A DNA stretch of 64,000 nt from Octopus sinensis. Lineage: Eukaryota. The translations under genes were made by a program, and so were the position numbers. Every line of letters starts with the position of its first letter. The stretch's first letter is position 1. The DNA lies in NCBI RefSeq assembly GCF_006345805.1, contig NC_043003.1, positions 108,314,001-108,378,000 of the forward strand. The letters are read 5' to 3'. Under the pieces are notes generated by a model. The model had not been told where the DNA came from. It saw only the letters and a program-made list of their open reading frames with translations, and did not search any database. Below, piece by piece: positions 39,573 through 61,632 of the stretch.

Positions 39573-41038
39573 CATCTTATTTTAGTATGAAATATTGATA
39601 GCAAATATATCATATATAACCAGAAGACAAGGGCATTATTTGTGAAAAGAAACTCGATCGAGGACTTAAATGTAATTCTGCAGAACTCACCATTATACAA
39701 GGATATAAGTTGACTCGCGTAACCAATAGATGAAACCTCATTTTCATTTAGTGCATCGTAGTGCATCTGGACGTCTCAGATAAGTTCTATTCGTCTTCAA
39801 GTGACAGACAGCAGGAAATGTTGAAATCAATATTTCAAGTTAACGAAATGCCTATCATATTTATAATGTTCTTAATGAACAGAGCAGAGAAGTGTAGCGA
39901 TCATAATCTGTTTCTAGTTAAGTGTACTGAATGATTTCAGAGTTTAGAATCTTGATCATGAACACAATGTAACAGTGGTAATACATAATGTAGGCTTACA
40001 GAAACCTTATGGGCCGGACAATAGTCTATCGATTTACTTCACTGCAACTCAAGAATACAGCTGAATAAATTTGGTAAAATGGCTAATTGGTCAACAGAAT
40101 TAGGTTTCCTTTTAATATATCTTGTGGTGAAGAATTTCTTTTCGTAACCTCATAGCTCTGAGTTCGATCCTACAATGCAGCTGTTCGGCAAGTCTTCCCA
40201 AATAGCATAGGGTTAACCACTACCTTGAGAATAGAATGTTTTTGACGGAAACTACGTGGAATCTCGTCGCGTGTGTTCATGTGTGTGTGTGTTCGAGTTT
40301 ATATTTTCTGGTGTACTGAGCTGCGACACTTTATGTAAAAGAAATCAACTCCAACTCAAAATCGATAAAATAAGCACAAACTATAACAAGCTTTACGATC
40401 AATATGATGGACAAAGATACTTGAAGGTGGTGGCCCAGGATGGCCACTATCGAATGGCAGATCACTAATAAAAGAGGTGTTCTGTTGGTCAACTACATCA
40501 AAATGTGTGTGTGCGTTCGTGTGTGTGTGTGTGTGTGTGCGTGTGTGTGTGTGTATGTGTGTGTGTGTGTGTGTGTATGTGTGTGTGTGTGTGTATGTGT
40601 GTGTGTGTATGTCTTCATTACATTGCATTGAAGTTAGCCCAGTTCTTTGGTTCTGAGATGCTACATTTTCCACCTAAGCCCGAACAAGTGAGATGGCATT
40701 GAAATTGTGATGCTGGGGTTTCTTCTCTTCGCAGCGGACCACCTTTATCATTATCATTATTATTCTGGTATTCTATCCTTTTTAATCCAGACAATGGAAA
40801 GCTAGAAGTTTGTCTGAATCGATAAGATGTCCCTTCGCTTCGGCAATGGCAAGACACTCATCATCAATCTCGTGAAACCACTTGTTAACGCAGATAAACA
40901 CGATAAAATGACCAACCATCTTCACCAAGTTGCAACAGAAGCAGCAGCAGCAGCAGCAGCAGCAGTAACTACGAAGTAAACCGTTTCCCAGCCTGTTTTT
41001 TTCTTCTTCTTCTTCTTCTTCTTCTTCTTCTTCTTCTT

Positions 41039-44467: not shown

Positions 44468-45417
44468 TTTTAGACATTTGATCACAGGTCCATCTAATCC
44501 GGGCTAATCTAAAGCTTACCAACAACAATATCATCAACAACAACAGCAGCAGCAGTAGCAGCAGCAGCAGCAGGACAGCGATGGCTGGCATAAAGCTTTT
44601 AGTCAAGAAAAGTTATAGTGAAGAATGAAGCTGTGTCTCTAAGTGAAATAAGAATTGGCGTCAGAACGGTCATCCATTATTATCCGATCCGTTATCCGTG
44701 TGGCTTTCGTACCTCTAATCATCAATATGTAGCAAATGTGCAAGACGGATATTGATATTGTACCAGTAACGTGGTTAATACCAACAGTGTCAAATAGGTT
44801 TCTGATTACGTTTTGGAATTATTGATGGTGAATAAATGATATTGCAGCTAACATCTGAACTTTATCTTCACAAATTAACTTCGTTTATAATTTTTGTTGC
44901 CGGAATATATTTTATATTCTATGTTTGTTGCAAAACATCGATAAAACAATAAAAGATTTTTGGTGCCCTATATACATATATATATATATATTATCATATA
45001 ATATCATATGATATCATAAATCATGTGTGCGTGTGCGTGTGTGTGTGTGTGGAGTTTACACATCCCATCTATTTGTCACTTTCTGTTTCTTTCCTTCCTT
45101 TTTTCCTTTCTCTCTTTCTCTCTCTTTCTTCCTTCCGTCTCTCTCTCTTTCTCTCTCTGTATATAACTATATCTATGGCACCAAAAATGTCTTATTGGTT
45201 TTATATACATATATATATATATATACATACATGCATATATATATATATATGTATATATACATAAGTGTTCATGTGTCTGTGTTATATATATATATACACA
45301 CACACACATATATATATACATACATATATATCATATATATACACTATGCCTATGCACACATGTACATCCAAACATATATATGCGTGTGTCTACACATAGA
45401 TATACACAGGTTTATAT

Positions 45418-45530
45418 ACATACATACATACACACATATATACATACATACATACATACATACATACATACATACATACATACATACATACATACATACA
45501 TACATACATACATACATACATACATACATA
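45418..45530. repeat. (ATAC)n microsatellite; a (GATA)n tract also lies at 46300-46398
   Basis: Direct reading of the sequence. Confidence 0.95.
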
Positions 45531-46132
45531 CGCATTCCGCACTTATTCCTCTCAAGACTATTGATATATAATTATCACTAACGGAAATCAAATTAACACC
45601 ATAACTTGGAACATCGTTACACATATCAATTCACAAGTGCAAACATTATCTTTCTAGGTTCGCAACACATGGGTATTCGCATTTCTTGCAACTAGCTTAA
45701 TCTATGTCTGTACAATCAGCAAGGGAGTAAAACAAAGAGGGTTGTAGCGGATTATGAATTTATACCGCTCAGAAAATTTTTTAAAAAATATTAAAATAGA
45801 CTTATAAAAATAGATACGACTGCAACCGGGAAACCGCGAAATCTACTACAGTGTTTTTTTTTATGTAAAGGAATTCTCTGGAAAATTCAGATATAAGTAA
45901 ATTTAAATTCTACTTACGAAGAAAAGTATGGTATTGATATTTCATCGTGTAAAGGATTCTACGGATGACATAAGTGCGAAAAAACTGTTCAAAATTTAGG
46001 TTTCCCCAGGATATTGATATAAAAAAATATTGCCAACTGATATTAAATTAGTCGTAGTTTTAGGGATATTGATTTAGATATATATACATATATATATACA
46101 CACAGACAACACACCACACACACACACACACG

Positions 46133-46175
<43 letters not shown>

Positions 46176-46211
46176 TATATATATATGCATATACATATAT
46201 ATATACATATT

Positions 46212-46254
<43 letters not shown>

Positions 46255-46297
46255 CATATATATCAACGTATATATATATAGAGAGAGAGAGGGAGAG

Positions 46298-46398
<101 letters not shown>

Positions 46399-46706
46399 GC
46401 ATGCTGATGCAAACAAGAAAAATAGAACTCAAAATATGGGTGTATGTATATTTTTATTATTTAACCGAAGTAACAGAGTGACTCATGGTCCGAGAGTTTC
46501 GTACGTTGTCATTTATCAAACTTCTGCTGTGCAGCAATCAAGTTTCGAAGATGTCTCATTTTCTATTCTTCGTTATGATTTGTTGACTATATAAATATAT
46601 ACTCTATGTGCTGCATAAGATCAAGTGCAGCAAACTTAGGATTTACCTATTGAGTGGAGTATCGCGTAACTGTTTATCTTGAATTTCATATGTTGTATAC
46701 GTTGTG

Positions 46707-46744
<38 letters not shown>

Positions 46745-46939
46745 GGAGTTTAACGCAGGTGTAATTCAAATACCTTTACTTCCGACACATGTTTCGAAGA
46801 TATCACTGATATTAATTCCAAAGGAATAAAATGGTGTAAAACAATGTAATCTATTTATCTATATTTTCCGTGTTAATTGCTAACAAGGGAAAAATACACA
46901 CATCTATATATATAGATGTGTCTGTGTTTGAAACTCCAC

Positions 46940-47130
46940 CACCACCACCACCGTCGCTTGACAACCGATATTGGTGTGTTAAGGACCCCGTAACTTAGCC
47001 GTTTGGCAAAACATACAGATAGAATAAGTACTAGGCTTACAAAGAATAAACCTTGTAGTCGATTTCTTTGACTTAAGGCGGTGCTCCAACATGGCCACAG
47101 TCACCTGACAGAAACAAGTAAAATAATATA
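46940..47130 (+). mobile_element. Family-B SINE tail
   Basis: CGCTTGACAACCGAT...GGCGGTGCTCCAACATGGCCACAGTC...GAAACAAGTAAAA. Confidence 0.8.
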
Positions 47131-47177
47131 AGAACTATACCGTTTTAATCCCCAGAAACGCCGGGTATCTCTGCTAG

Positions 47178-47233
<56 letters not shown>

Positions 47234-48202
47234 GTATATTCATACATACATACATATATACATGCATACAAACATACATACATACATGCATGCATACATA
47301 CATACATACATACATACATACATACATACATACATACATACATACATACATACTTGGCCGGATTAAGGCCAACACACGCCTTAAGCAGAACCCAACGACC
47401 TTCTATTGTCAATAGATGCGGAATACAAAATGATAGATTAAAATTCTATTTTCGTACGGAATGAATATAAATAACTTATAACCAGAGCAACGGGAAAAGT
47501 ACAAATTTTCAGCAATTCTATTCATTTGTAAAATGTTAAATCCAGAACAAAGCAAAGCATTCTCTTCTCTTGATCATATTTGTTTAATGATTAATCCGAG
47601 CGAACATATAAATATGCTTTCATACATCGGTTTACATCCATCCATCCATCCATCCATCCATCCATACATACATACATACATACATACATTTACATTCAGG
47701 CATTGCATCTATGCATGTTGCACGTATACATATATACACTCAAACATACAACCATGCATAGGAACATGCATGCATACATACATGCATGTATATATGCATT
47801 CATACATACAGACATGCACGCATATATACATGCATGTGTGCAAGCATGCATACATACATGTATACATAGAAACTTACGTACATATATGCAAGGAGGCGTA
47901 TATGCATTCTTACATGCATACACACAAGGAACATAGATGCATTCATATACGTATATGCATACTTATATATGCATGTATACATGCATGCATACGCATATGT
48001 ATGCGTGCATTCAAACATGCATACAGGCATACCTATATACATTATAGGTGACTGAGGTAATTGGTGATTGAAAAAATCTACTATGAGAAACAAGAATGAC
48101 AGAATCACTAACACACGTGTATGTATGTATGTAAGTATGTATGTATGCATGTATGCATTTTTCAATGCACGTACGTATGTATGTATATACATACGTATTT
48201 AA

Positions 48203-48244
<42 letters not shown>

Positions 48245-48966
48245 GGGAATGTTTCTGTGTATGTATGTATGTATGTATGTGTGTATGTATGTGTGTGTGT
48301 GAGGTACTTGGCTTAACCATAAATCTAACCAAGACTGTTATCATGTTTCGGCCAACACCAGGAATGCCATTCATAGAACCTAGTATCTACGTGTATGGAA
48401 GAAAACTTGCTGTGGTTTCTAAGCTCGTTTGCTTAGGGAGCACACTAAACACATCGGCGAATCTTGATGTTGAAGTGTCGCTACGCATTCCGAATCCCAA
48501 TTTTGCTTTGGCAAACTGGAAGACCGCCTATTGTCTAGACATGGTATTTCCATTGTGACAAAGATTATAGTATACAATACGTGTATATTAACGTCTTTAT
48601 TGCGAAACCTGGACTGTGTATCGTAAGCACTTAAAACTTATGGAACGTTTTTATCAACTGTGGTGTGAACGATGAAAAGAGTACAACAGAAAAAGGTAGA
48701 ATGGAAATGTAATTGGGTCTTACCTCGTTGGAGATGAATTCGGATACCTCTTAGCCAACTCGATGCGTCTGGTGCCTTCGTCGTGTCTGCAGCAACTCGT
48801 CGATCCCACACGTGCGTTCTGCCTGTCACTTCCGCTTCCTCTCGCGCATGCGCCCTGCAAGCCCTGCTTCCGCCCTGCGAGCCCTACTTCCGCTCTCCCC
48901 TATCCGTCATACTCTCTCACCAACACCACATGCCCCCCTGATCTACAGATCACTGAACCGGCTTTC

Positions 48967-51877
48967 TCACTCGCTCCCGCACCTGAAACTGGTTTCATAA
49001 TCAGCCAACCAGGAAGGAGGGTGCCGCTCCCTCTGTGGTCGCAGTGCGACCCTAGGACTTGTTCCTGGTGTGTTGCTGCCGGCCTCATCATCCTGTCTGT
49101 TGTTTTCGTCTTGCCCACTGCTGCTGGTCCCATCCTCTGGGGCATGGACAATCCTCCGTATGTCCAAAACGTGGCGTGGCATACCATCGACCGAGATGCT
49201 ATTTTTTGAATTTACAGAGGTTATTGTCCCCTTTCCCCATTGCGATGTACACCGTGCGTTTGGGGGTTTTACCCAGACTTCCTCCCCGACCTGCACGAAG
49301 GCGTGCTCTTCCTCTGCCCCGAGTCGCATTGATGTAGTACACGGATGCCTCCACTCGTACCTGAATATTGCCCTGTGTGGCACCGACTCCTCAGCCTGTC
49401 CTGATCTGGGCGACATATTGTACCAAAACACGGCCTCGACTGGTGAAATGTGACCCCTCTCTGCCATGGCCTTGATGGTACGATGATGCCTTTCCACCAC
49501 CCCGTTTCCACTTGGCCGGTATGCCGCCCTGAAGAAGCGGTTGACCTTCCACTCATCAAGCATTTCTCTCAGCACATCCGAGCGAAATGCAGTGCCGTTG
49601 TCCAGAAGCAGTTCATCCACGGGGCCTCGTTCCAGGAATATCTCATTCAACACTTTCACAATTTCTTCTGCGGTCCCCGACTTCATCTCCCTCCATATGG
49701 CCAACCGCCCCGGTCCGCAGTCAACCATTGAGAGGTATGTCCCCTGCCGGTAGTGTGTTATGTCCACCGCCAGTCGTTTCCAGTCCTGGTCCACTGGAAT
49801 ACTTCCCGCTTCATGCACGACCGGAGCAGGGTCGATGGACTGGCACCTGTCACAACTGATAACCACTCTCTGCACGCTCTGTCTTGTTACGTCGGAGTCA
49901 ACTTTTCTGGCTAGGAACAATGTCCTGTCCACACCCATGTGATGCATGGGTGCAGTCTCCGTACTCCGAGTCGCTCAGACGGCATACTGCAGCTACAGCC
50001 CGCTTCGCATCCTCTGGCACCTGCAACCAGGCTCGCTTTACCCTGGTCAGGACGTGTGCCCTGTTCTTCTCGGAAGGCACAAAGATCACGCTCAGCTTCA
50101 GATTGAACTCAGTGGTTAGTTCACGCAGTATTCCTAATCGACGCTTTACCAGCATCTCTACAGCCCCTTTGGTCCGCACCCTCCGCTCATCGGTGATGAC
50201 TGCTGTCGCCCAACCAAGTACAGTGGCCGAATCAGTCCTGATTTCTATGGTGTGCAACCCCCACTTCAAGGCTAGGTTCTCCCCCTTCAGCACGGCATCC
50301 AACTCCGCCACGTTGATATGATTGCAGTCATCCATCTTCCTGAGCCAGGCTGCATCTTCCACCGTGACACCTCCCACTTCCAAGACAACCCCTATTGCGA
50401 TGCTACTGGCGTCACACCATACGATCCCGCTCTTTGATTTGGGAACATACCAGCTGCCCCTCATTGGGTACTCTGCTCCTACTCTGACCAAGACTTCCTG
50501 CTTCATGTCGATCGTCCTCTCCCCCACTTTATCATTCCACTTCACTCCTTCGGCTCGTCTCTTGATGAGGCTACATGCTGTCCGGAGCCAACCTGCAATC
50601 GGGTAGTGTCCCACCAGCTTCCCACACACAGAGAACAGTTCCAGTCTACTCATGCTGGCGCCCAGTTCAGGGACCTCATTCCCTCGCCGGAACACCAAGG
50701 CGCCGGCCTTGTCTCTCCATAGCTTGAGGCCCAGTGCAGCACCTCCCTCCATAGCCTCTGGCGGCTTGGCGATCAGTCCAAAACTCTTCAGGTGGCCTAT
50801 GACCTCCGTTGCTGGTATCACGGTTTCATCCACCAGAATGTCATCGATGTATGAATTGGTGGCCCTTTTTACTCTGTCCACCTTCCCCAGGATGGCCTTG
50901 AGAATTGTTGGCATAATCTTCGGCGCTGAATTCAGCCCGAATCCCAACCTGGTCAGACAGTACGTCCGGCCCCTATACCTGACGAGCTGGTACTTCCATA
51001 ATTTCTCAGCCACATGCACCTGTAGGTATGCCGACTTCAAATCAATAATCGTGGAGGCCCCCATCGTCTGCCTCCACTCTCGCAAGGTTACTCCGCAGAC
51101 ATCCGTGGCCTCGCCGCCTGTATGACACGACACGTGGTCATTCAGCTCTCGGAAGTCAAGCATTGGCCTGACCTTATGCTTTGTGGGCTGTATCACCGCC
51201 ATCAGTGGCAGGACTCCGCTCTCTTCTTTTTCCCAAGGGATCAGTATGCCCTCCTTAATCCACCGCTCCACCTCCCCCTCGAACTCACTTCTGGCATCTC
51301 CTTTTAGAGTATGCTGATAGCAGCCCACTTTATTCTTTAACATCAGGGGCTCTCCCTTCCAGTGCCACTCCACTGTCCACCTCTTGCCATCAAAGACAGC
51401 CCGAAAATCCTGGTCTTCAATGGTGTGCGCCGCATCCTTTTCCTCACGGTTGTCGCCGGTGCATGGTCTCGCCCTACACGGTTTCCCCGCTATCCCAAAC
51501 GTTACGCCAGCCTCGTTGACGGTGACACCTCCCAAGCGGGTGATTGCATCCATCCCCATCACCACATCAATCTCGTCCACCAAGTGACCAACCACAATCG
51601 CTCGCAACGTCAGCTGTAGTCCCTGCACCACAATCTGCGCATCCGTAACCCCTACGCAGTGTACTTCTCTTCCGTCGACTGCCCTAACACTGCTTCCTCC
51701 ACTCCACGTCTCTGCCACTTCTGTAGTCATCAGGGTCGTTGTACAGCCCGTGTCCACCAGGGCTCGCGACATCTTCCCCTCCACCAGAATGTCGACCACA
51801 GGTAGCGATGATAAACGCGCCACTACTGATCCAAAGGGACAACTACCGGCGCAGTAGTCTCCCGCAGTCCGTTTCCC
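48967..51877 (-). CDS. pol: pol (protease, RT, RNase H, integrase); -1 frame relative to gag; frameshift at about 49950
   Basis: LVDTGC protease; LDFRELND, IIDLKSAYLQV, FGLNSAP and YIDD in RT; WCDASS...HINVAELDAV...TDS in RNase H; HH-CC plus LAVDITHY/LLDNG/VERHHR integrase DDE. Confidence 0.9.
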
Positions 51878-52580
51878 CGCAGACACTCGCTGGCTACATG
51901 CCCCAGCTCTCGACACCGGTAGCAAATCACCTCAGGCTTGGGCAACACGTAGTCACGCACCATGTGTGGACCTTGGCACCGGAAACACTGTCCTTTGAAC
52001 GGTCGCACACGTTCTTTCCTCAGCCCCTCTCCGCTGCTCCTAGCTGGGCCACTTTTCGACGTTGCAGTCGCTGCTACCGACGTCATCCTGCTGCACGAAA
52101 CTAGTACACGTGCCCGAGATATGATGTCGGCCATCGGCATCGAACGCACGTTCGGAGCTTCTGTAGCTCGACCGACATGATGTCGGGAAAGCCGGTCACG
52201 AACGCCAACCTAACCGTCCGTTCTAGCGACTCTCCCTCATAACCCGCCAATTTAGCCAGTCTTCTAAGCTCATTGGCAAACACGTCCACCTGTTGCCCAG
52301 TACATCTCATTCTACCCAGGCGAGCGTATGCCTCGAACATTCCTTCCGCAAAGGCCTCCATCAGTCGGATTTCTACTTTATCTGCGCTAAGTTGGTCCGT
52401 CTCCTCTATCTCTAAATATAACGCCAACGCCGGGCCATCCAAGTACAGCGGCATGAAGCTCGCCAGCTCACCTATACCATGGAGCTTCGCCACCAACTTC
52501 ACTCTCTTCAACCAAGCGACCACATCAGTGTCGCCGCAAAACGGTGTTATAGGTTCGCGCGAAACCCGAGCACTCTGCAT
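51823..52580 (-). CDS. gag: gag with two zinc knuckles; one 1-bp frameshift at about 52155
   Basis: DVVAWLKRVKLVAKL...PLYLDGPALALY; CFRCQGPHMVRD(Y) and CYRCRELGHVASEC. Confidence 0.85.
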
Positions 52581-52626
52581 AATTTTTTTATTTTTTTTTT
52601 ATTTTTATAAAACCGAGTGTTTATTT

Positions 52627-52638
52627 GCCGAAATAGCT
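52627..52638 (-). promoter_or_regulatory. Putative non-canonical primer-binding site complementary to tRNA-Phe nt 1-12
   Basis: + strand GCCGAAATAGCT abuts the 5' LTR with no gap; metazoan tRNA-Phe(GAA) begins GCCGAAAUAGCUCAG. Confidence 0.7.
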
Positions 52639-54405
52639 TGTGGTGTGAACGATGAAAAGAGTACAACAGAAAAAGGGAGAATGGAAATGTAATTGGGTCT
52701 TACCTCGTCGGAGATGAATTCGGATACCTCTTAGCCAACTCGATGCGTCTGGTGCCTTCGTCGTGTCTGCAGCAACTCGTCGATCCCACACGTGCGTTCT
52801 GCCTGTCACTTCCGCTTCCTCCCGCGCATGCGCCCTGCAAGTCCTGCTTCCGCCCTTCGAGCCCTACTTCCGCTCTCCCCTATCCGTCATACTCTCTCAC
52901 CAACACCACATCAACAATGTCTCAGAAGGAATTTGAGGATCAGTTGGAAAATGTTTGTGAGTGACGATGAAGAGGCTTGAAAGAGGGAAATGCTTCAGTG
53001 TTGCAGCTTTGCTATTGCAGTACAGATTGAGATGGAGTGGACACTTAGTCAGAATGACAGACACCCGAATGCCTAAACAACTTTTTTACGGAGAATTGGT
53101 GACAGATACGCGTCCATCACACAAACCAAAGATGAGGTACAAAGATTGTCTAGAATCGGGATTGAATTAGATAAACGTTCTAATTGATAACTGGGAAGAT
53201 TTAGGGCATTGCCGAGAAAAATGGAAAAAAGTTGTGTATGAAGGCAAAAATGAATTTGAAAGGAAGAGAATGGAGCATGCAAAGATCAAAAGAAAGATGA
53301 GAAGAAGTGACAGGAATGATGTTCTAACAAGCATTAATGAACCTGATGATCATACATGTGATGAACGTGGAAAGATTTGTCTTAGTAAGGCTGGGCTAAA
53401 GAGCCATACGAAATCACACTTTGCACAACCGCACATTGATTATAGATGGACAGACGATTTCGAATGCGTTCTCTCTCATAAAGTTTCATAAAGATCAAAA
53501 AGTGGCTTGAAAAGGCAGAGTAAAGTTGATGGAGCTGTAAACTATACAATCACCAAGTGTGTATGTGTGTATGTATGTACGTAATGCGGAAGTTGTGCGA
53601 GAAAGAAAGAGGAGATAGAAAAGCAGAAGATTTGAAGAAATGATAAAAGTGATGCTCCATTATGGCCTTGGCCGTAGTGGCTAAAATTAAATTCAAAACG
53701 TCTGGGTGGATACAGTAAGAAAGAGAAGAAAAGGGAATTAAAAAAATGCAGCAGAGAGAGAGAGAGAGAGTAAATGAGTGTGGCAGAGAGAGAGGTGTAC
53801 AGAGTGAAAAAGAAAGATAGTAAGAAAGTACTGAGAGGAAGAAAGATAGAAAGATAGAAGTAGGGGTTAGTCAGGCAGATGAATATGGAGGGGAAGAAAG
53901 GGAGAAAGCGTTGTAGAGGAATTCAACAAAAATTGCTACCAAGCAGTAGATTCTATTATCAGCGGAAGTTCATGTAAGCACGCTGCCTTCCTTTCCAATA
54001 ATAATCATCGCGTAGATATTCATTGAACCGTACAAGTCCTCGGCTAGAATAAGCAGTTCTTTAATCACAAGGAACACGAACAAATTGTGTTTAGCCTGTT
54101 GATCGATCAGCATGGATTGACTTTTGCCTGTATTCTGCCAATCAGAAATGAAATGAACCTTTTCTTATTTGATGTGATCTCAAGAATTTCGATAAAAAAA
54201 TATGATAAACAGAGAAATAAAAATTATCATGCTTAAGACATATTTTATAAATTCTAATCCAAAACATCCTAGAATGCATTATTAAGTTCCGAATTCTGTT
54301 TTAATTTTGGTTTTAGCTTTGAAATCCAAAGCTGTTTTCGATCGATTTAATGACTGGTTTACGTTTGTGACATAAACATAGCTACTTAATCCAAGACGAA
54401 CGATG

Positions 54406-54760: not shown

Positions 54761-55488
54761 GGAATTTTTGTAATAGTGTTTGTAGATCTAAATTTATCTT
54801 CATATTTATTACGAAATTCTCCCTCCGATAGACAACAAATATAGAACACTTTTATTAGTTAAACAACATTTTATATCAATAGATTTAAATAAATAGAAGT
54901 GTTATTATGTATTAAAATTACAATTATCATCATATCTTTTTACACGTTTTATTACAGTTTATAGATTAAGTCAGACCCTGATACTTAATTATATACGTAT
55001 ATATTATTGTTGTATGTTATTATAATAGCGAAAGATTGTGTTAGACATACACGAGTATGGATTGATATTATTTGAGATATATAGATATGTATTTCAATAG
55101 TTGTAGATTCTACTTAATTATTTTGTCCGTTATGATTTTGTTGTTTCTTAATATTTGATGTAATTGATATGTAGGTGAATGGCTATCGCTTACGCTCATA
55201 ATACATAGACATTTGAATTAATATTTTTACAATCCAACAAGTCTTTCACAAGGAAATTCGTCTATCTACACACCATTACCCTGATATGACTTATATATAA
55301 GGGAATTGAATTGTTTATATATCAAAAATGTATATAAGTCGAAACAAATTGTTGGTTCTTTAGATAATTATTTATGTTATATTATATTCGTAGTATATTA
55401 TGTTATATTATAATACAAATAAATTATTGGATTGTCGAGTGTATCTGGCCGCAGCCTCAAGGCTGAAACATATAAACGAATAAAAGAA

Positions 55489-55547
<59 letters not shown>

Positions 55548-55718
55548 TTGTTTGTGTGTGTGTGTGTGGTTGTTTGTGTGTGTGTGTGTGTGTGTGTGTG
55601 GTTGTTTGTGTGTGTGTGTGTTTGTGTAAGTGCGCGCGTGTGTGTGTGCGTGCGCGTGTGTACGTGGGCACATATATATGTGTGTGTGCGTGTGTATGTA
55701 TATATATATGTATATATA

Positions 55719-56412: not shown

Positions 56413-57701
56413 GTCCCAGTTATAAGTTACAGCTACAATATCCTTAACTGGACACGAAATGAACTGTCCAAAATAGATAGGAAAACAAGAAAAATACTGA
56501 CAGGATCTAGGATGCATCACCCAAAATCTGACATAGAAAGACTATATATACAACGTATAGAAGGTGGTAGAGGCCTTATACAGCTGGAAAACTACTATAA
56601 AATAACCACTGCAAAAATACCTACTTCAGAAGGAAGGAAAACTGATCCAGATAGCAGCAAAACACGAGCAAAACAAAAAACTGTTCTCAGTATTTAAAGA
56701 AGCCGACAAATACAAACAAGAAATCATACCACCTAATAAACACAAAGAAGAAGAAGAAGATGATGAAGAAACAACAAAAGCTATAAAACAAATGAAATCC
56801 AAACTAAAAATAGAACAGCAACGAGCCATGATAAAACGATGGCAAGAAAAGCCCCTTCATGGTAAATACTGCACTAAACTAGACGCAAAAGAAATAGACA
56901 AAGAAAAATCCCAGCAATGGTTGAGAAGCTCAGGACTCAAAGCAGAAACAGAGGGATTTTTAATTGCAGCACAAGACCAAAGCCTCCCCACCAGAAATTA
57001 CCAAAAACATGTAATGAAAAGAAATATTACAAGTAACTGCAGAATATGTGGAGATGGACAAGAAACAATAAATCATATTATCTCTAGCTGCCCAGTCCTG
57101 GCTAAGAAGGAATATATTCACAGACATGACAGAGTTGGAACCTACATACATTGGAAGCTATGCCAACATTATGGAATAACAACAGAAAAAAGATGGTATA
57201 GGCACACACCAGAAAAGGTCACAGAAAACGAGAAAGCAACCATACTCTGGGATATGCCGATACACACAGATAGAGAAATTAAGGCCAACAGACCAGATAT
57301 AGTTGTCAGAGATCATGAAGAAAAAAAATGCTTTCTAATTGATGTATCAATACCGGCAGATTACAACGTGTCTCTAAAAGAAATGGAGAAACTCTCAAAA
57401 TACAAAGACCTGGAAATAGAGGTAACTAGAATGTGAAACCTGAAAACAGAAACAATTCCTATCATAGTAGGTGCATTAGGCATGATAAAAAAATATTCAG
57501 ACAAATACATAACAAAAACACCAGGACTTACAAACACATATAACATACAGAAAATTGCACTACTAGGCACTGCACACATCCTGCGCAGAACACTTTCCAT
57601 ACAATAACCATCAGAGCATCACAACAAATCACAGCACATACCCAAGGCACACAGAGCTGCGCTCGGTAGTGAAGTGGAAGCACGCTATAAAAATAAAACT
57701 A

Positions 57702-57704: not shown

Positions 57705-61632
<3,928 letters not shown>

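What the first reader, a model, noticed from the sequence alone, without database searches (positions are those of the whole stretch)
52627..52638. LTR retrotransposon PBS matches the 5' end (nt 1-12) of tRNA-Phe, not a tRNA 3' end
Seen: on the element's sense strand the 5' LTR ends ...CACCACA and is followed immediately by AGCTATTTCGGC, with no TGG motif. The LTR boundary is fixed independently by the other LTR and the TCAAC TSD. Known: metazoan cytoplasmic tRNA-Phe(GAA) begins GCCGAAAUAGCUCAG, so the 12 nt are a perfect complement of tRNA nt 1-12 and the match stops exactly at the tRNA 5' end. Standard elements use the tRNA 3' CCA end; copia and Ty5 use an internally cleaved tRNAi-Met; S. 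pombe Tf1 cleaves an 11-nt primer from its own RNA 5' end with RNase H. Inference: this family may prime minus-strand synthesis from a 12-nt 5' tRNA-Phe fragment cut after U12, in effect a trans version of Tf1 priming or use of a host 5' tRF. I know of no description of this, but I cannot check the literature.
Basis: partly seen in the sequence, partly recalled or inferred. Interest (0 to 1): 0.9.

Follow-up and report, generated by a model that had tools for sequence, protein, structure and literature searches.

The report
Retrotransposon primed from tRNA 5′ end
A compact jumping gene in this animal genome, and dozens of relatives in molluscs, crustaceans and environmental samples, has a 12-base primer site matching the first 12 bases of the host's phenylalanine tRNA rather than the usual tRNA tail, which points to a way of starting reverse transcription that I could not find described.

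Summary
A 4.25-kb LTR retrotransposon lies on the minus strand at 48659-52910, with 272-nt LTRs and a TCAAC duplication. Its 5' LTR is followed at once by AGCTATTTCGGC, the exact complement of nt 1-12 of metazoan tRNA-Phe(GAA).

This is a family trait, not chance. Eight genomic copies with two LTRs and about 30 metagenome contigs carry a 12-mer AGCTAT-NNN-GGC at the same place. Hosts include Argonauta, Oratosquilla, Petrolisthes, Macrobrachium and Amphibalanus, and pol identity falls to about 37%. Both flanks are unconserved, and gag's ATG follows 0-50 nt later.

Only the middle triplet varies, and it corresponds to acceptor-stem positions 4-6. I recovered real tRNA-Phe(GAA) genes beginning GCCUAGAUAGCU and GCCGGGAUAGCU, which match two variant sites exactly. 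One element matches tRNA-Lys3 nt 1-12. A subgroup matches an elongator-tRNA-Met-like 5' end. Site type follows the host, not the pol tree.

No element contains a complementary partner, so Tf1-type self-priming is excluded.

Best reading: nt 1-12 of a host tRNA, cut after nt 12, primes minus-strand synthesis. The cleavage and priming are inferred, not shown. Ten literature searches found no description.

The parts
52627..52638 (-). 12-nt primer-binding site. The sense strand reads AGCTATTTCGGC, the exact complement of tRNA-Phe(GAA) nt 1-12.
   Evidence: The same site is conserved across the family.
52639..52910 (-). 5' LTR, 272 nt. The sense strand reads TGTGGTG...CACCACA.
48659..48930 (-). 3' LTR, with 5 differences from the 5' LTR.
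52911..52915 (.). Target-site duplication TCAAC on the 5' side of the element.
48654..48658 (.). Target-site duplication TCAAC on the 3' side of the element.
48931..48939 (-). Polypurine tract end. The sense strand reads AGGGGGG plus a 2-nt spacer CA, directly before the 3' LTR.
   Evidence: The same layout of G-run, 2 nt, then TG is seen in relatives.
48940..48951 (-). Palindrome GATCTGTAGATC abutting the polypurine tract.
   Evidence: GATCnnnAGATC is also present in L002-L005.
52155..52580 (-). gag, N-terminal part. The ATG at 52580 lies 46 nt after the primer site.
51823..52161 (-). gag, C-terminal part with a CCHC zinc knuckle. It is in a different frame, because a frameshift at about 52150-52160 breaks gag.
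49898..51925 (-). pol: aspartic protease, RT (YIDD), DUF7047 and RNase H.
48967..49959 (-). Integrase (HHCC zinc finger plus rve core). A frameshift at about 49925-49955 separates it from RNase H.

Best explanation
The 12 nt after the 5' LTR are the minus-strand primer-binding site of a widespread, compact (about 4.2-4.6 kb) LTR-retrotransposon lineage with the order gag, PR-RT-DUF7047-RNase H-IN. The site base-pairs with the first 12 nt of a host tRNA: acceptor strand 1-7, U8, A9 and D-stem 10-12. In most members the tRNA is tRNA-Phe(GAA).

The primer's 3'-OH must sit opposite the first base after U5, so the tRNA has to be cut between nt 12 and 13. The most likely route is that gag's CCHC chaperone anneals a full-length tRNA-Phe, and the element's RNase H then cuts at the end of the 12-bp RNA duplex. 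That is the geometry of Tf1 self-priming, but in trans. RT extends U12 into U5-R. Later, plus-strand strong-stop DNA copies the 12 RNA nt up to the tRNA's physical 5' end. This regenerates the site for the second strand transfer.

Shown here: the complementarity, its conservation, its co-variation with real tRNA 5' ends, and the absence of a cis partner. Inferred: annealing, the cut, the enzyme that makes it, and priming itself.
For: 1. Position. In 8 of 8 genomic copies whose LTR ends are fixed by a second LTR, the 12-mer starts within 0-2 nt of the end of the LTR match. It starts exactly at the end in window and L001-L005 and in L063. In L062 the LTR match ends 2 nt short of the CA, because its 3' LTR is disrupted. 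That is where any LTR element's primer must anneal.

2. Conservation. There are 33 non-redundant junctions, plus L001, L013, L062 and L063. All have ..ACA|AGCTAT-NNN-GGC, although pol identity is only 37-62%. Flanks on both sides are unconserved. The distance to pol is a constant ~700 nt. gag's ATG starts 0-50 nt after base 12, so the site cannot be longer than 12 nt.

3. Identity of the partner.
- The TTC type is the complement of tRNA-Phe nt 1-12 in human and Drosophila.
- The CTA type is the complement of GCCUAGAUAGCU, the 5' end of a bona fide tRNA-Phe(GAA) gene (L067; ARAGORN plus Rfam 69.6 bits).
- The CCC type is the complement of GCCGGGAUAGCU, from a tRNA-Phe gene in L066 (66.5 bits).
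- L036 is the complement of tRNA-Lys3 nt 1-12.
- L040 and L042 carry CGCTACCGAGGC. This is the complement of GCCUCGGUAGCG, 1 nt from human tRNA-Met(e). In this type the two bases next to the LTR change from AG to CG, as tRNA positions 11-12 predict.

4. Variation is confined to acceptor-stem positions 4-6. U8, A9, G10 and C11 stay fixed.

5. Site type follows host, not element lineage. The CTA type occurs in two distant pol clades, and both are from malacostracans. The barnacle and cephalopod copies have the TTC type. The CGC type arises at four or more places in the tree.

6. No cis partner. There is no complement with up to 2 mismatches anywhere in 38 loci. There is no recurrent local 6-mer partner.

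7. The 12-bp duplexes have a predicted free energy of -18.7 to -24.2 kcal/mol. The window's leader RNA is unstructured.

8. gag carries a CCHC knuckle and pol an RNase H domain.
Against: - No RNA or cDNA data were available. The 12-nt species, the cut at 12/13 and the priming are not observed.
- The tRNA-Phe of the window's host and of the named hosts was not seen. The tRNA genes with GCCUAGA.. and GCCGGGA.. come from unidentified ENA samples, so the link between host and site type is only a correlation.
- No matching tRNA gene was recovered for the CAC, CGC and TAC triplet types. There are only protein-level hints for these.
- Odd members remain: L018 AGCTATTCTTTC, L064 a 13-mer, L027 ..GCGCA.
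- The polypurine tract is followed by 2 spacer nt before the LTR's TG. If integrase trims 2 nt at both ends, the primer could instead end at G10, with AG being the trimmed dinucleotide.
- Opening the acceptor and D stems of a folded tRNA for only 12 bp is demanding.
- No second complementarity box to the rest of tRNA-Phe was found to help annealing.
Confidence: 0.62

Rival explanations
1. The partner and pairing are the same, but the primer is a pre-existing host 5' tRNA fragment. A cellular nuclease cuts in the D arm and the fragment is trimmed to 12 nt. The element's own RNase H does not make it.
For: Short 5' tRNA fragments cut in the D loop are a known class (own knowledge). A review attributes the Ty5 primer's internal cut to host RNase P (PMC5371799). 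Nothing in the sequence data separates this from in-situ cleavage.
Against: Known 5' fragments are 14 nt or longer. They would leave unpaired 3' bases opposite the non-complementary ..ACA end of U5. The boundary is exactly 12 nt for Phe-, Lys- and Met-like partners alike. That fits a cut measured from the duplex end better than a tRNA-specific host cut.
Confidence: 0.15
2. The 12-mer binds the tRNA 5' end, or is otherwise conserved, for a purpose other than priming, such as RNA packaging, translation control of the adjacent gag ATG, or integrase end recognition. Minus-strand synthesis would then be primed by something else.
For: The site lies 0-50 nt before gag's ATG. Priming has not been shown.
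Against: The site sits exactly where U5 ends in all copies. No alternative primer site exists nearby: there is no TGG-type site and no cis complement. Conservation stops sharply at base 12. The variable triplet tracks real tRNA-Phe acceptor stems, which a protein-recognition or translation signal would not do.
Confidence: 0.1
3. Tf1-type self-priming: the 12-mer pairs with the 5' end of the element's own transcript.
For: A short primer site abutting U5 without TGG resembles Tf1.
Against: No complement with up to 2 mismatches was found in either LTR or anywhere else in 38 loci. A control pattern gave 3 hits.
Confidence: 0.02
4. A chance resemblance in one copy.
For: None beyond the shortness of the match.
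Against: The chance of a given 12-mer at a fixed position is 6e-8. The site recurs in about 37 divergent elements at the same position.
Confidence: 0.01

Closest known systems
Tf1/Tf2 self-priming (Schizosaccharomyces pombe). Described as tRNA-independent in PMC5371799; the mechanistic details are from my own knowledge of Levin 1995/1996.
   Same: A very short primer site (11 vs 12 nt) directly abuts U5. It is complementary to the extreme 5' end of an RNA. The RNA must therefore be cut at the end of the duplex to create the priming 3'-OH. The primer's own 5' end then limits plus-strand strong-stop synthesis.
   Different: In Tf1 the partner is the element's own transcript, in cis. Here no cis complement exists and the partner is a host tRNA, in trans. 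The pol shows no Pfam signature of the Ty3/gypsy group to which Tf1 belongs.
'Half-tRNA' priming of copia, and anticodon-stem-loop priming of Ty5 (PMC5371799).
   Same: The primer is a fragment of a host tRNA made by internal cleavage, not the native CCA end.
   Different: Those elements use initiator tRNA-Met, with a site complementary to an internal (anticodon-arm) region and a primer tens of nt long. Here the partner is tRNA-Phe (rarely Lys3 or Met(e)-like), the site is complementary to nt 1-12, and the cut is inside the D stem.
Canonical tRNA 3'-end priming (retroviruses, Ty1, Ty3, most Gypsy and BEL/Pao elements).
   Same: A host tRNA is chosen by base-pairing to a site next to U5. The site can switch between tRNAs during evolution.
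   Different: The canonical site begins TGG (complement of CCA) and pairs with the 3' 8-18 nt. Here there is no TGG and the pairing is to the opposite end of the tRNA.

Membership tests
LTR retrotransposon (general) | Two direct LTRs with TG..CA ends, a target-site duplication, a polypurine tract before the 3' LTR, and gag plus pol (PR, RT, RNase H, IN) | tested here: met
   The same anatomy is seen in L001-L005, L062 and L063.
Canonical tRNA-3'-end-primed elements | The primer site next to U5 begins TGG and is complementary to a tRNA 3' end | tested here: not met
   There is no TGG after the LTR in the window or in any relative. The 12-mer is AGCTAT-NNN-GGC.
Tf1/sushi-type self-primed elements | The primer site is complementary to the first ~11 nt of the element's own transcript (inside the LTR) | tested here: not met
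   No complement with up to 2 mismatches in the LTRs or elsewhere in 38 loci.
Tf1/sushi-type self-primed elements | The RNase H of the RT cuts the RNA duplex to release the primer | not testable with these tools
   An RNase H domain is present, but its activity cannot be computed.
copia/Ty5-type half-tRNA-primed elements | The primer site is complementary to the anticodon-arm region of initiator tRNA-Met | tested here: not met
   The complement is nt 1-12 of tRNA-Phe. There is no further complementarity to nt 13-66 above the control level.
Ty3/gypsy superfamily | Gypsy-type RT plus RNase H (Pfam RT_RNaseH / RT_RNaseH_2), often a chromodomain | tested here: not met
   None of 15 members hits these models. 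Only a weak RVT_1, RVT_3/RNase_H, DUF7047, rve and Integrase_H2C2 are found. The nearest PDB relatives are retroviral RTs and INs, weakly.
BEL/Pao superfamily | Pfam Peptidase_A17, DUF1758/DUF1759 and DUF5641 signatures | tested here: not met
   There are no such hits at E<=1 in 15 members. This is only an HMM test. No RT phylogeny with reference elements was possible, so the superfamily stays unresolved.
tRNA 5'-end partner (the claim itself) | The host's own tRNA-Phe begins with the complement of the resident primer-site type | tested here: inconclusive
   Exact matches exist to human and Drosophila tRNA-Phe, and to tRNA-Phe genes in L066 and L067 from unidentified samples. tRNA genes of the named hosts and of the window's host could not be fetched.

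The most novel reading that the evidence does not exclude
The element's own RT/RNase H cuts an annealed, full-length host tRNA between nt 12 and 13. This would be a trans form of the Tf1 reaction, and it would yield the shortest tRNA-derived primer known. Because the site must match the host's tRNA-Phe acceptor stem, its middle triplet co-evolves with the host. It would then act as a host-range barrier and as a marker of horizontal transfer. A site aimed at the tRNA 5' end would also be invisible to silencing by 3' tRNA fragments.
Probability: 0.4. Interest if true: 0.85.

Novelty: new variant of a known kind. Interest (0 to 1): 0.78.

Why it matters
Accounts of LTR-retroelement replication list three ways to start minus-strand DNA: a tRNA 3' end, an internally cleaved initiator tRNA-Met, and Tf1 self-priming (PMC5371799). 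A large animal lineage appears to use the opposite end of a tRNA. It has 1,281 clusters at 50% identity with E<=1e-30.

This would add a fourth mode and a natural trans analogue of the Tf1 RNase H cut. It would also give a function to a very short 5' tRNA fragment.

In practice, LTR-annotation tools look for sites complementary to tRNA 3' ends. They will report these elements as lacking a primer site. The site triplet could serve as a host marker for elements found in metagenomes.

Tried and rejected
- Self-priming was rejected, and so was a local hairpin partner for the variable triplet.
- A second, Ty1/Ty3-like complementarity box to the rest of tRNA-Phe was not found above the control level.
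- A structured leader presenting the site was not found. The z-score was 0.67.
- Host identification failed: the window's integrase protein is not on record and the window has no tRNA gene. ARAGORN on 61 fetched loci gave only one tRNA-Val-like hit.
- The scan of viral contigs found no relatives.
- Literature searches for the 12-mers and for the concept found only tRNA probes and primers, with no transposon context. Levin's 1995 paper is not held in the library.
- Superfamily assignment by Pfam and PDB profiles was inconclusive.
Padding it with X worked.
- A looser motif regex picked up the antisense of the fetched tRNA genes themselves, so I did not use its counts.

Full report
**Observation.** On the + strand, 52627-52638 reads GCCGAAATAGCT. 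On the minus strand, which is the sense strand of the element, the 5' LTR ends ...TTCACACCACA. It is followed at once by AGCTATTTCGGC, then by an A-rich leader, and then by gag's ATG at 52580.

The LTR boundary does not depend on the motif. A 272-nt direct repeat lies at 48659-48930 and 52639-52910. It reads TGTGGTG...CACCACA and shows 5 differences. It is flanked by TCAAC on both sides, at 48654-48658 and 52911-52915. No TGG follows the LTR. The 12-mer is unique in the window, and no near-copy lies in the LTRs. That tRNA-Phe(GAA) starts GCCGAAATAGCTCAG is documented for human (PMC10505166) and for Drosophila (PMC7038984).

**The element.** It is 4,252 bp long. It encodes gag with a CCHC knuckle, and pol with aspartic protease, RT (YIDD), Pfam DUF7047, RNase H and integrase. 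This copy is slightly decayed. One frameshift lies in gag at about 52150-52160, and one lies between RNase H and integrase at about 49925-49955. A G-run polypurine tract plus 2 nt precedes the 3' LTR.

**The family.** The pol has hundreds of relatives. At 50% clustering, 1,281 representatives score E<=1e-30. Named hosts are Argonauta hians, Petrolisthes manimaculis, Oratosquilla oratoria, Macrobrachium rosenbergii, Amphibalanus amphitrite and Trichuris muris. Most other hits sit on contigs of about 4 kb.

None of 15 members hits the Pfam models typical of Ty3/gypsy RNase H or of BEL/Pao. The nearest solved structures are retroviral integrases and RTs, and only weakly. I therefore leave the superfamily open.

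**The site is a family trait.** I fetched seven further genomic copies with two LTRs: L001-L005, L062 and L063. In each, the LTR is followed by a 12-mer of the form AGCTAT-NNN-GGC, starting directly after the LTR or, in L062, 2 nt after the end of the LTR match. In 56 metagenome loci the same motif appears once per element. It follows ..ACA and lies a constant ~700 nt upstream of pol, with 33 non-redundant junctions.

Sequence on both sides of the motif is unconserved. In several elements gag's ATG starts at base 13 or 14, so the site is at most 12 nt long. Nine fixed bases would be expected about once by chance in the 250 kb fetched. Instead they occur about 37 times, always at this junction.

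**Who is the partner?** No element contains the reverse complement of its own 12-mer. With up to 2 mismatches there were 0 hits in 38 loci, against 3 for a control pattern. The variable triplet has no recurrent local partner. Tf1-type self-priming is therefore out.

Read as RNA, the complement is G1 C2 C3 N4 N5 N6 A7 U8 A9 G10 C11 U12. The invariant positions are those that are near-universal in tRNAs. The variable ones are acceptor-stem positions 4-6.

To test whether such tRNAs exist, I translated the antisense strand of a tRNA-Phe gene and used it as a protein query. This recovered 42 spurious ORFs laid over tRNA-Phe genes. I fetched three of them. All are tRNA-Phe(GAA) by ARAGORN and score 61-70 bits on the Rfam tRNA model.
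- L067 begins GCCUAGAUAGCU, the exact complement of the CTA-type site.
- L066 begins GCCGGGAUAGCU, the exact complement of the CCC type.
- L065 begins GCCUUGAUAGCU.

So tRNA-Phe genes vary in nature at exactly the positions where the site varies.

Two further site types point to other tRNAs. L036 (AGCTATCCGGGC) is the complement of tRNA-Lys3 nt 1-12. L040 and L042 (CGCTACCGAGGC, directly after a TGTGTTG..CAACA LTR in L040) are the complement of GCCUCGGUAGCG. That differs at one position from human elongator tRNA-Met. In the Met-like type the two bases next to the LTR change from AG to CG, as tRNA positions 11-12 require. This argues that pairing runs through nt 12.

**Host versus lineage.** A distance tree of RT-RNase H shows that site types are polyphyletic. 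The CTA type occurs in two distant clades, and every named host of that type is a malacostracan: Petrolisthes, Oratosquilla and Macrobrachium. The barnacle and cephalopod copies and the window carry the TTC type. The CGC type appears in at least four places. This is what adaptation to the host's tRNA predicts. The window's closest genomic relative is the Argonauta copy, which hints at a mollusc host.

**Mechanism (inferred).** U5 ends where minus-strand synthesis begins, so the primer's 3' end must pair with the first base of the 12-mer. That base pairs with tRNA nt 12, so the tRNA must be cut between nt 12 and 13, inside the D stem. Complementarity does not continue into U5: the LTR ends ..ACA where nt 13-15 would need CTG. 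It does not recur elsewhere either.

The geometry is that of Tf1. There, the first 11 nt of an RNA pair with a site abutting U5, and RNase H cuts at the duplex end. Here the RNA is a host tRNA. I therefore favour in-situ cleavage of an annealed tRNA by the element's RNase H, helped by the CCHC chaperone. A pre-made host 5' fragment is the main alternative.

The predicted 12-bp duplexes have free energies of -18.7 to -24.2 kcal/mol, and the window's leader is unstructured. Plus-strand strong-stop synthesis would run off the tRNA's physical 5' end, so it would need no modified-base stop.

**Caveats.**
- No RNA or cDNA evidence is available.
- Host tRNA genes of the named species were out of reach of the tools.
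- Three triplet types (CAC, CGC, TAC) lack a recovered tRNA.
- There are three odd members: L018, L064 and L027.
- The 2-nt spacer after the polypurine tract leaves open that integrase trims 2 nt. The primer would then end at G10.

**Novelty.** Ten full-text searches used the 12-mers, the tRNA 5' strings and concept terms. They returned only tRNA probes and primers, and reviews listing the three known priming modes. Subscription literature and Repbase reports are not covered, so prior description cannot be excluded. I rate this as a new variant of a known kind: tRNA-fragment priming, with Tf1-like geometry in trans.

Noticed in passing
window 48940-48951; L002, L003, L004, L005 just upstream of the 3' LTR: A palindrome GATCnnnAGATC directly abuts the polypurine tract in the window copy and its closer relatives. 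It is absent in L001, L040 and L062. It may be a hairpin that positions the plus-strand primer cut.
   Followed up: partly
window 48931-48939; L001-L005, L040, L062: In all copies the G-run of the polypurine tract is separated from the LTR's TG by exactly 2 nt (CA, GA, CG, AG and so on). This suggests that 2 nt are trimmed by integrase at that end.
   Followed up: partly
window ~52150-52160 and ~49925-49955: This copy has one frameshift in gag and one between RNase H and integrase. The first CCHC knuckle has lost its last Cys. The LTRs are still 98% identical.
   Followed up: yes
window 56792-57436, 59106-60479, 60614-61465 (+): ORFs with RVT_1 and zf-RVT domains indicate a non-LTR (LINE-type) retrotransposon in pieces. 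The region has a strong A-over-T skew.
   Followed up: partly
window 53020-53200 (+): The sequence next to the insertion site translates to a ...GELVTDTRPSHKPKMRYKDCLES.. motif. From memory it resembles the C-terminal tail of LINE ORF2 proteins. I did not test this.
   Followed up: no
window 45160-48300 and 40460-40660, 55450-55700: There are dense (ATAC)n, (AT)n and (AC)n microsatellite blocks. The window's GC is about 35%, against 52% inside the element.
   Followed up: no
L018 3233-3244; L064 ~257-269; L027 150-161: Three members have off-pattern sites. L018 has AGCTATTCTTTC, whose complement GAAAGAAUAGCU is still tRNA-like at positions 8-12. L064 has the 13-mer AGCTATTCACGGC. L027 has AGCTATCGCGCA.
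   Followed up: partly
L066 10073-10145 (-): This tRNA-Phe(GAA) gene has a G5·A68 mismatch. Its 3' strand would pair perfectly with GCCGUGA, which is the partner predicted for the CAC-type site.
   Followed up: partly
P0231-P0272: The protein collection holds spurious ORFs of 42-70 aa that are antisense translations of tRNA-Phe genes (..GPLDLQSNALPTELSR..). They proved a useful back door to eukaryotic tRNA genes.
   Followed up: yes
L062 1-11129: The Macrobrachium copy lies inside a formin-like gene (FH2/Drf_FH3) called on the opposite strand, presumably in an intron. Its 3' LTR is followed by a second partial repeat.
   Followed up: no
L005 1-2197 (-): Next to this element lies a gene with DUF1759, a domain typical of BEL/Pao gag. 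It belongs to a separate retrotransposon.
   Followed up: no
P0363-P0366, P0372, P0379: Proteins of about 1,340-1,416 aa match only the PR-RT-RNase H part of the profile. They may represent a related lineage with a different C-terminal half.
   Followed up: no
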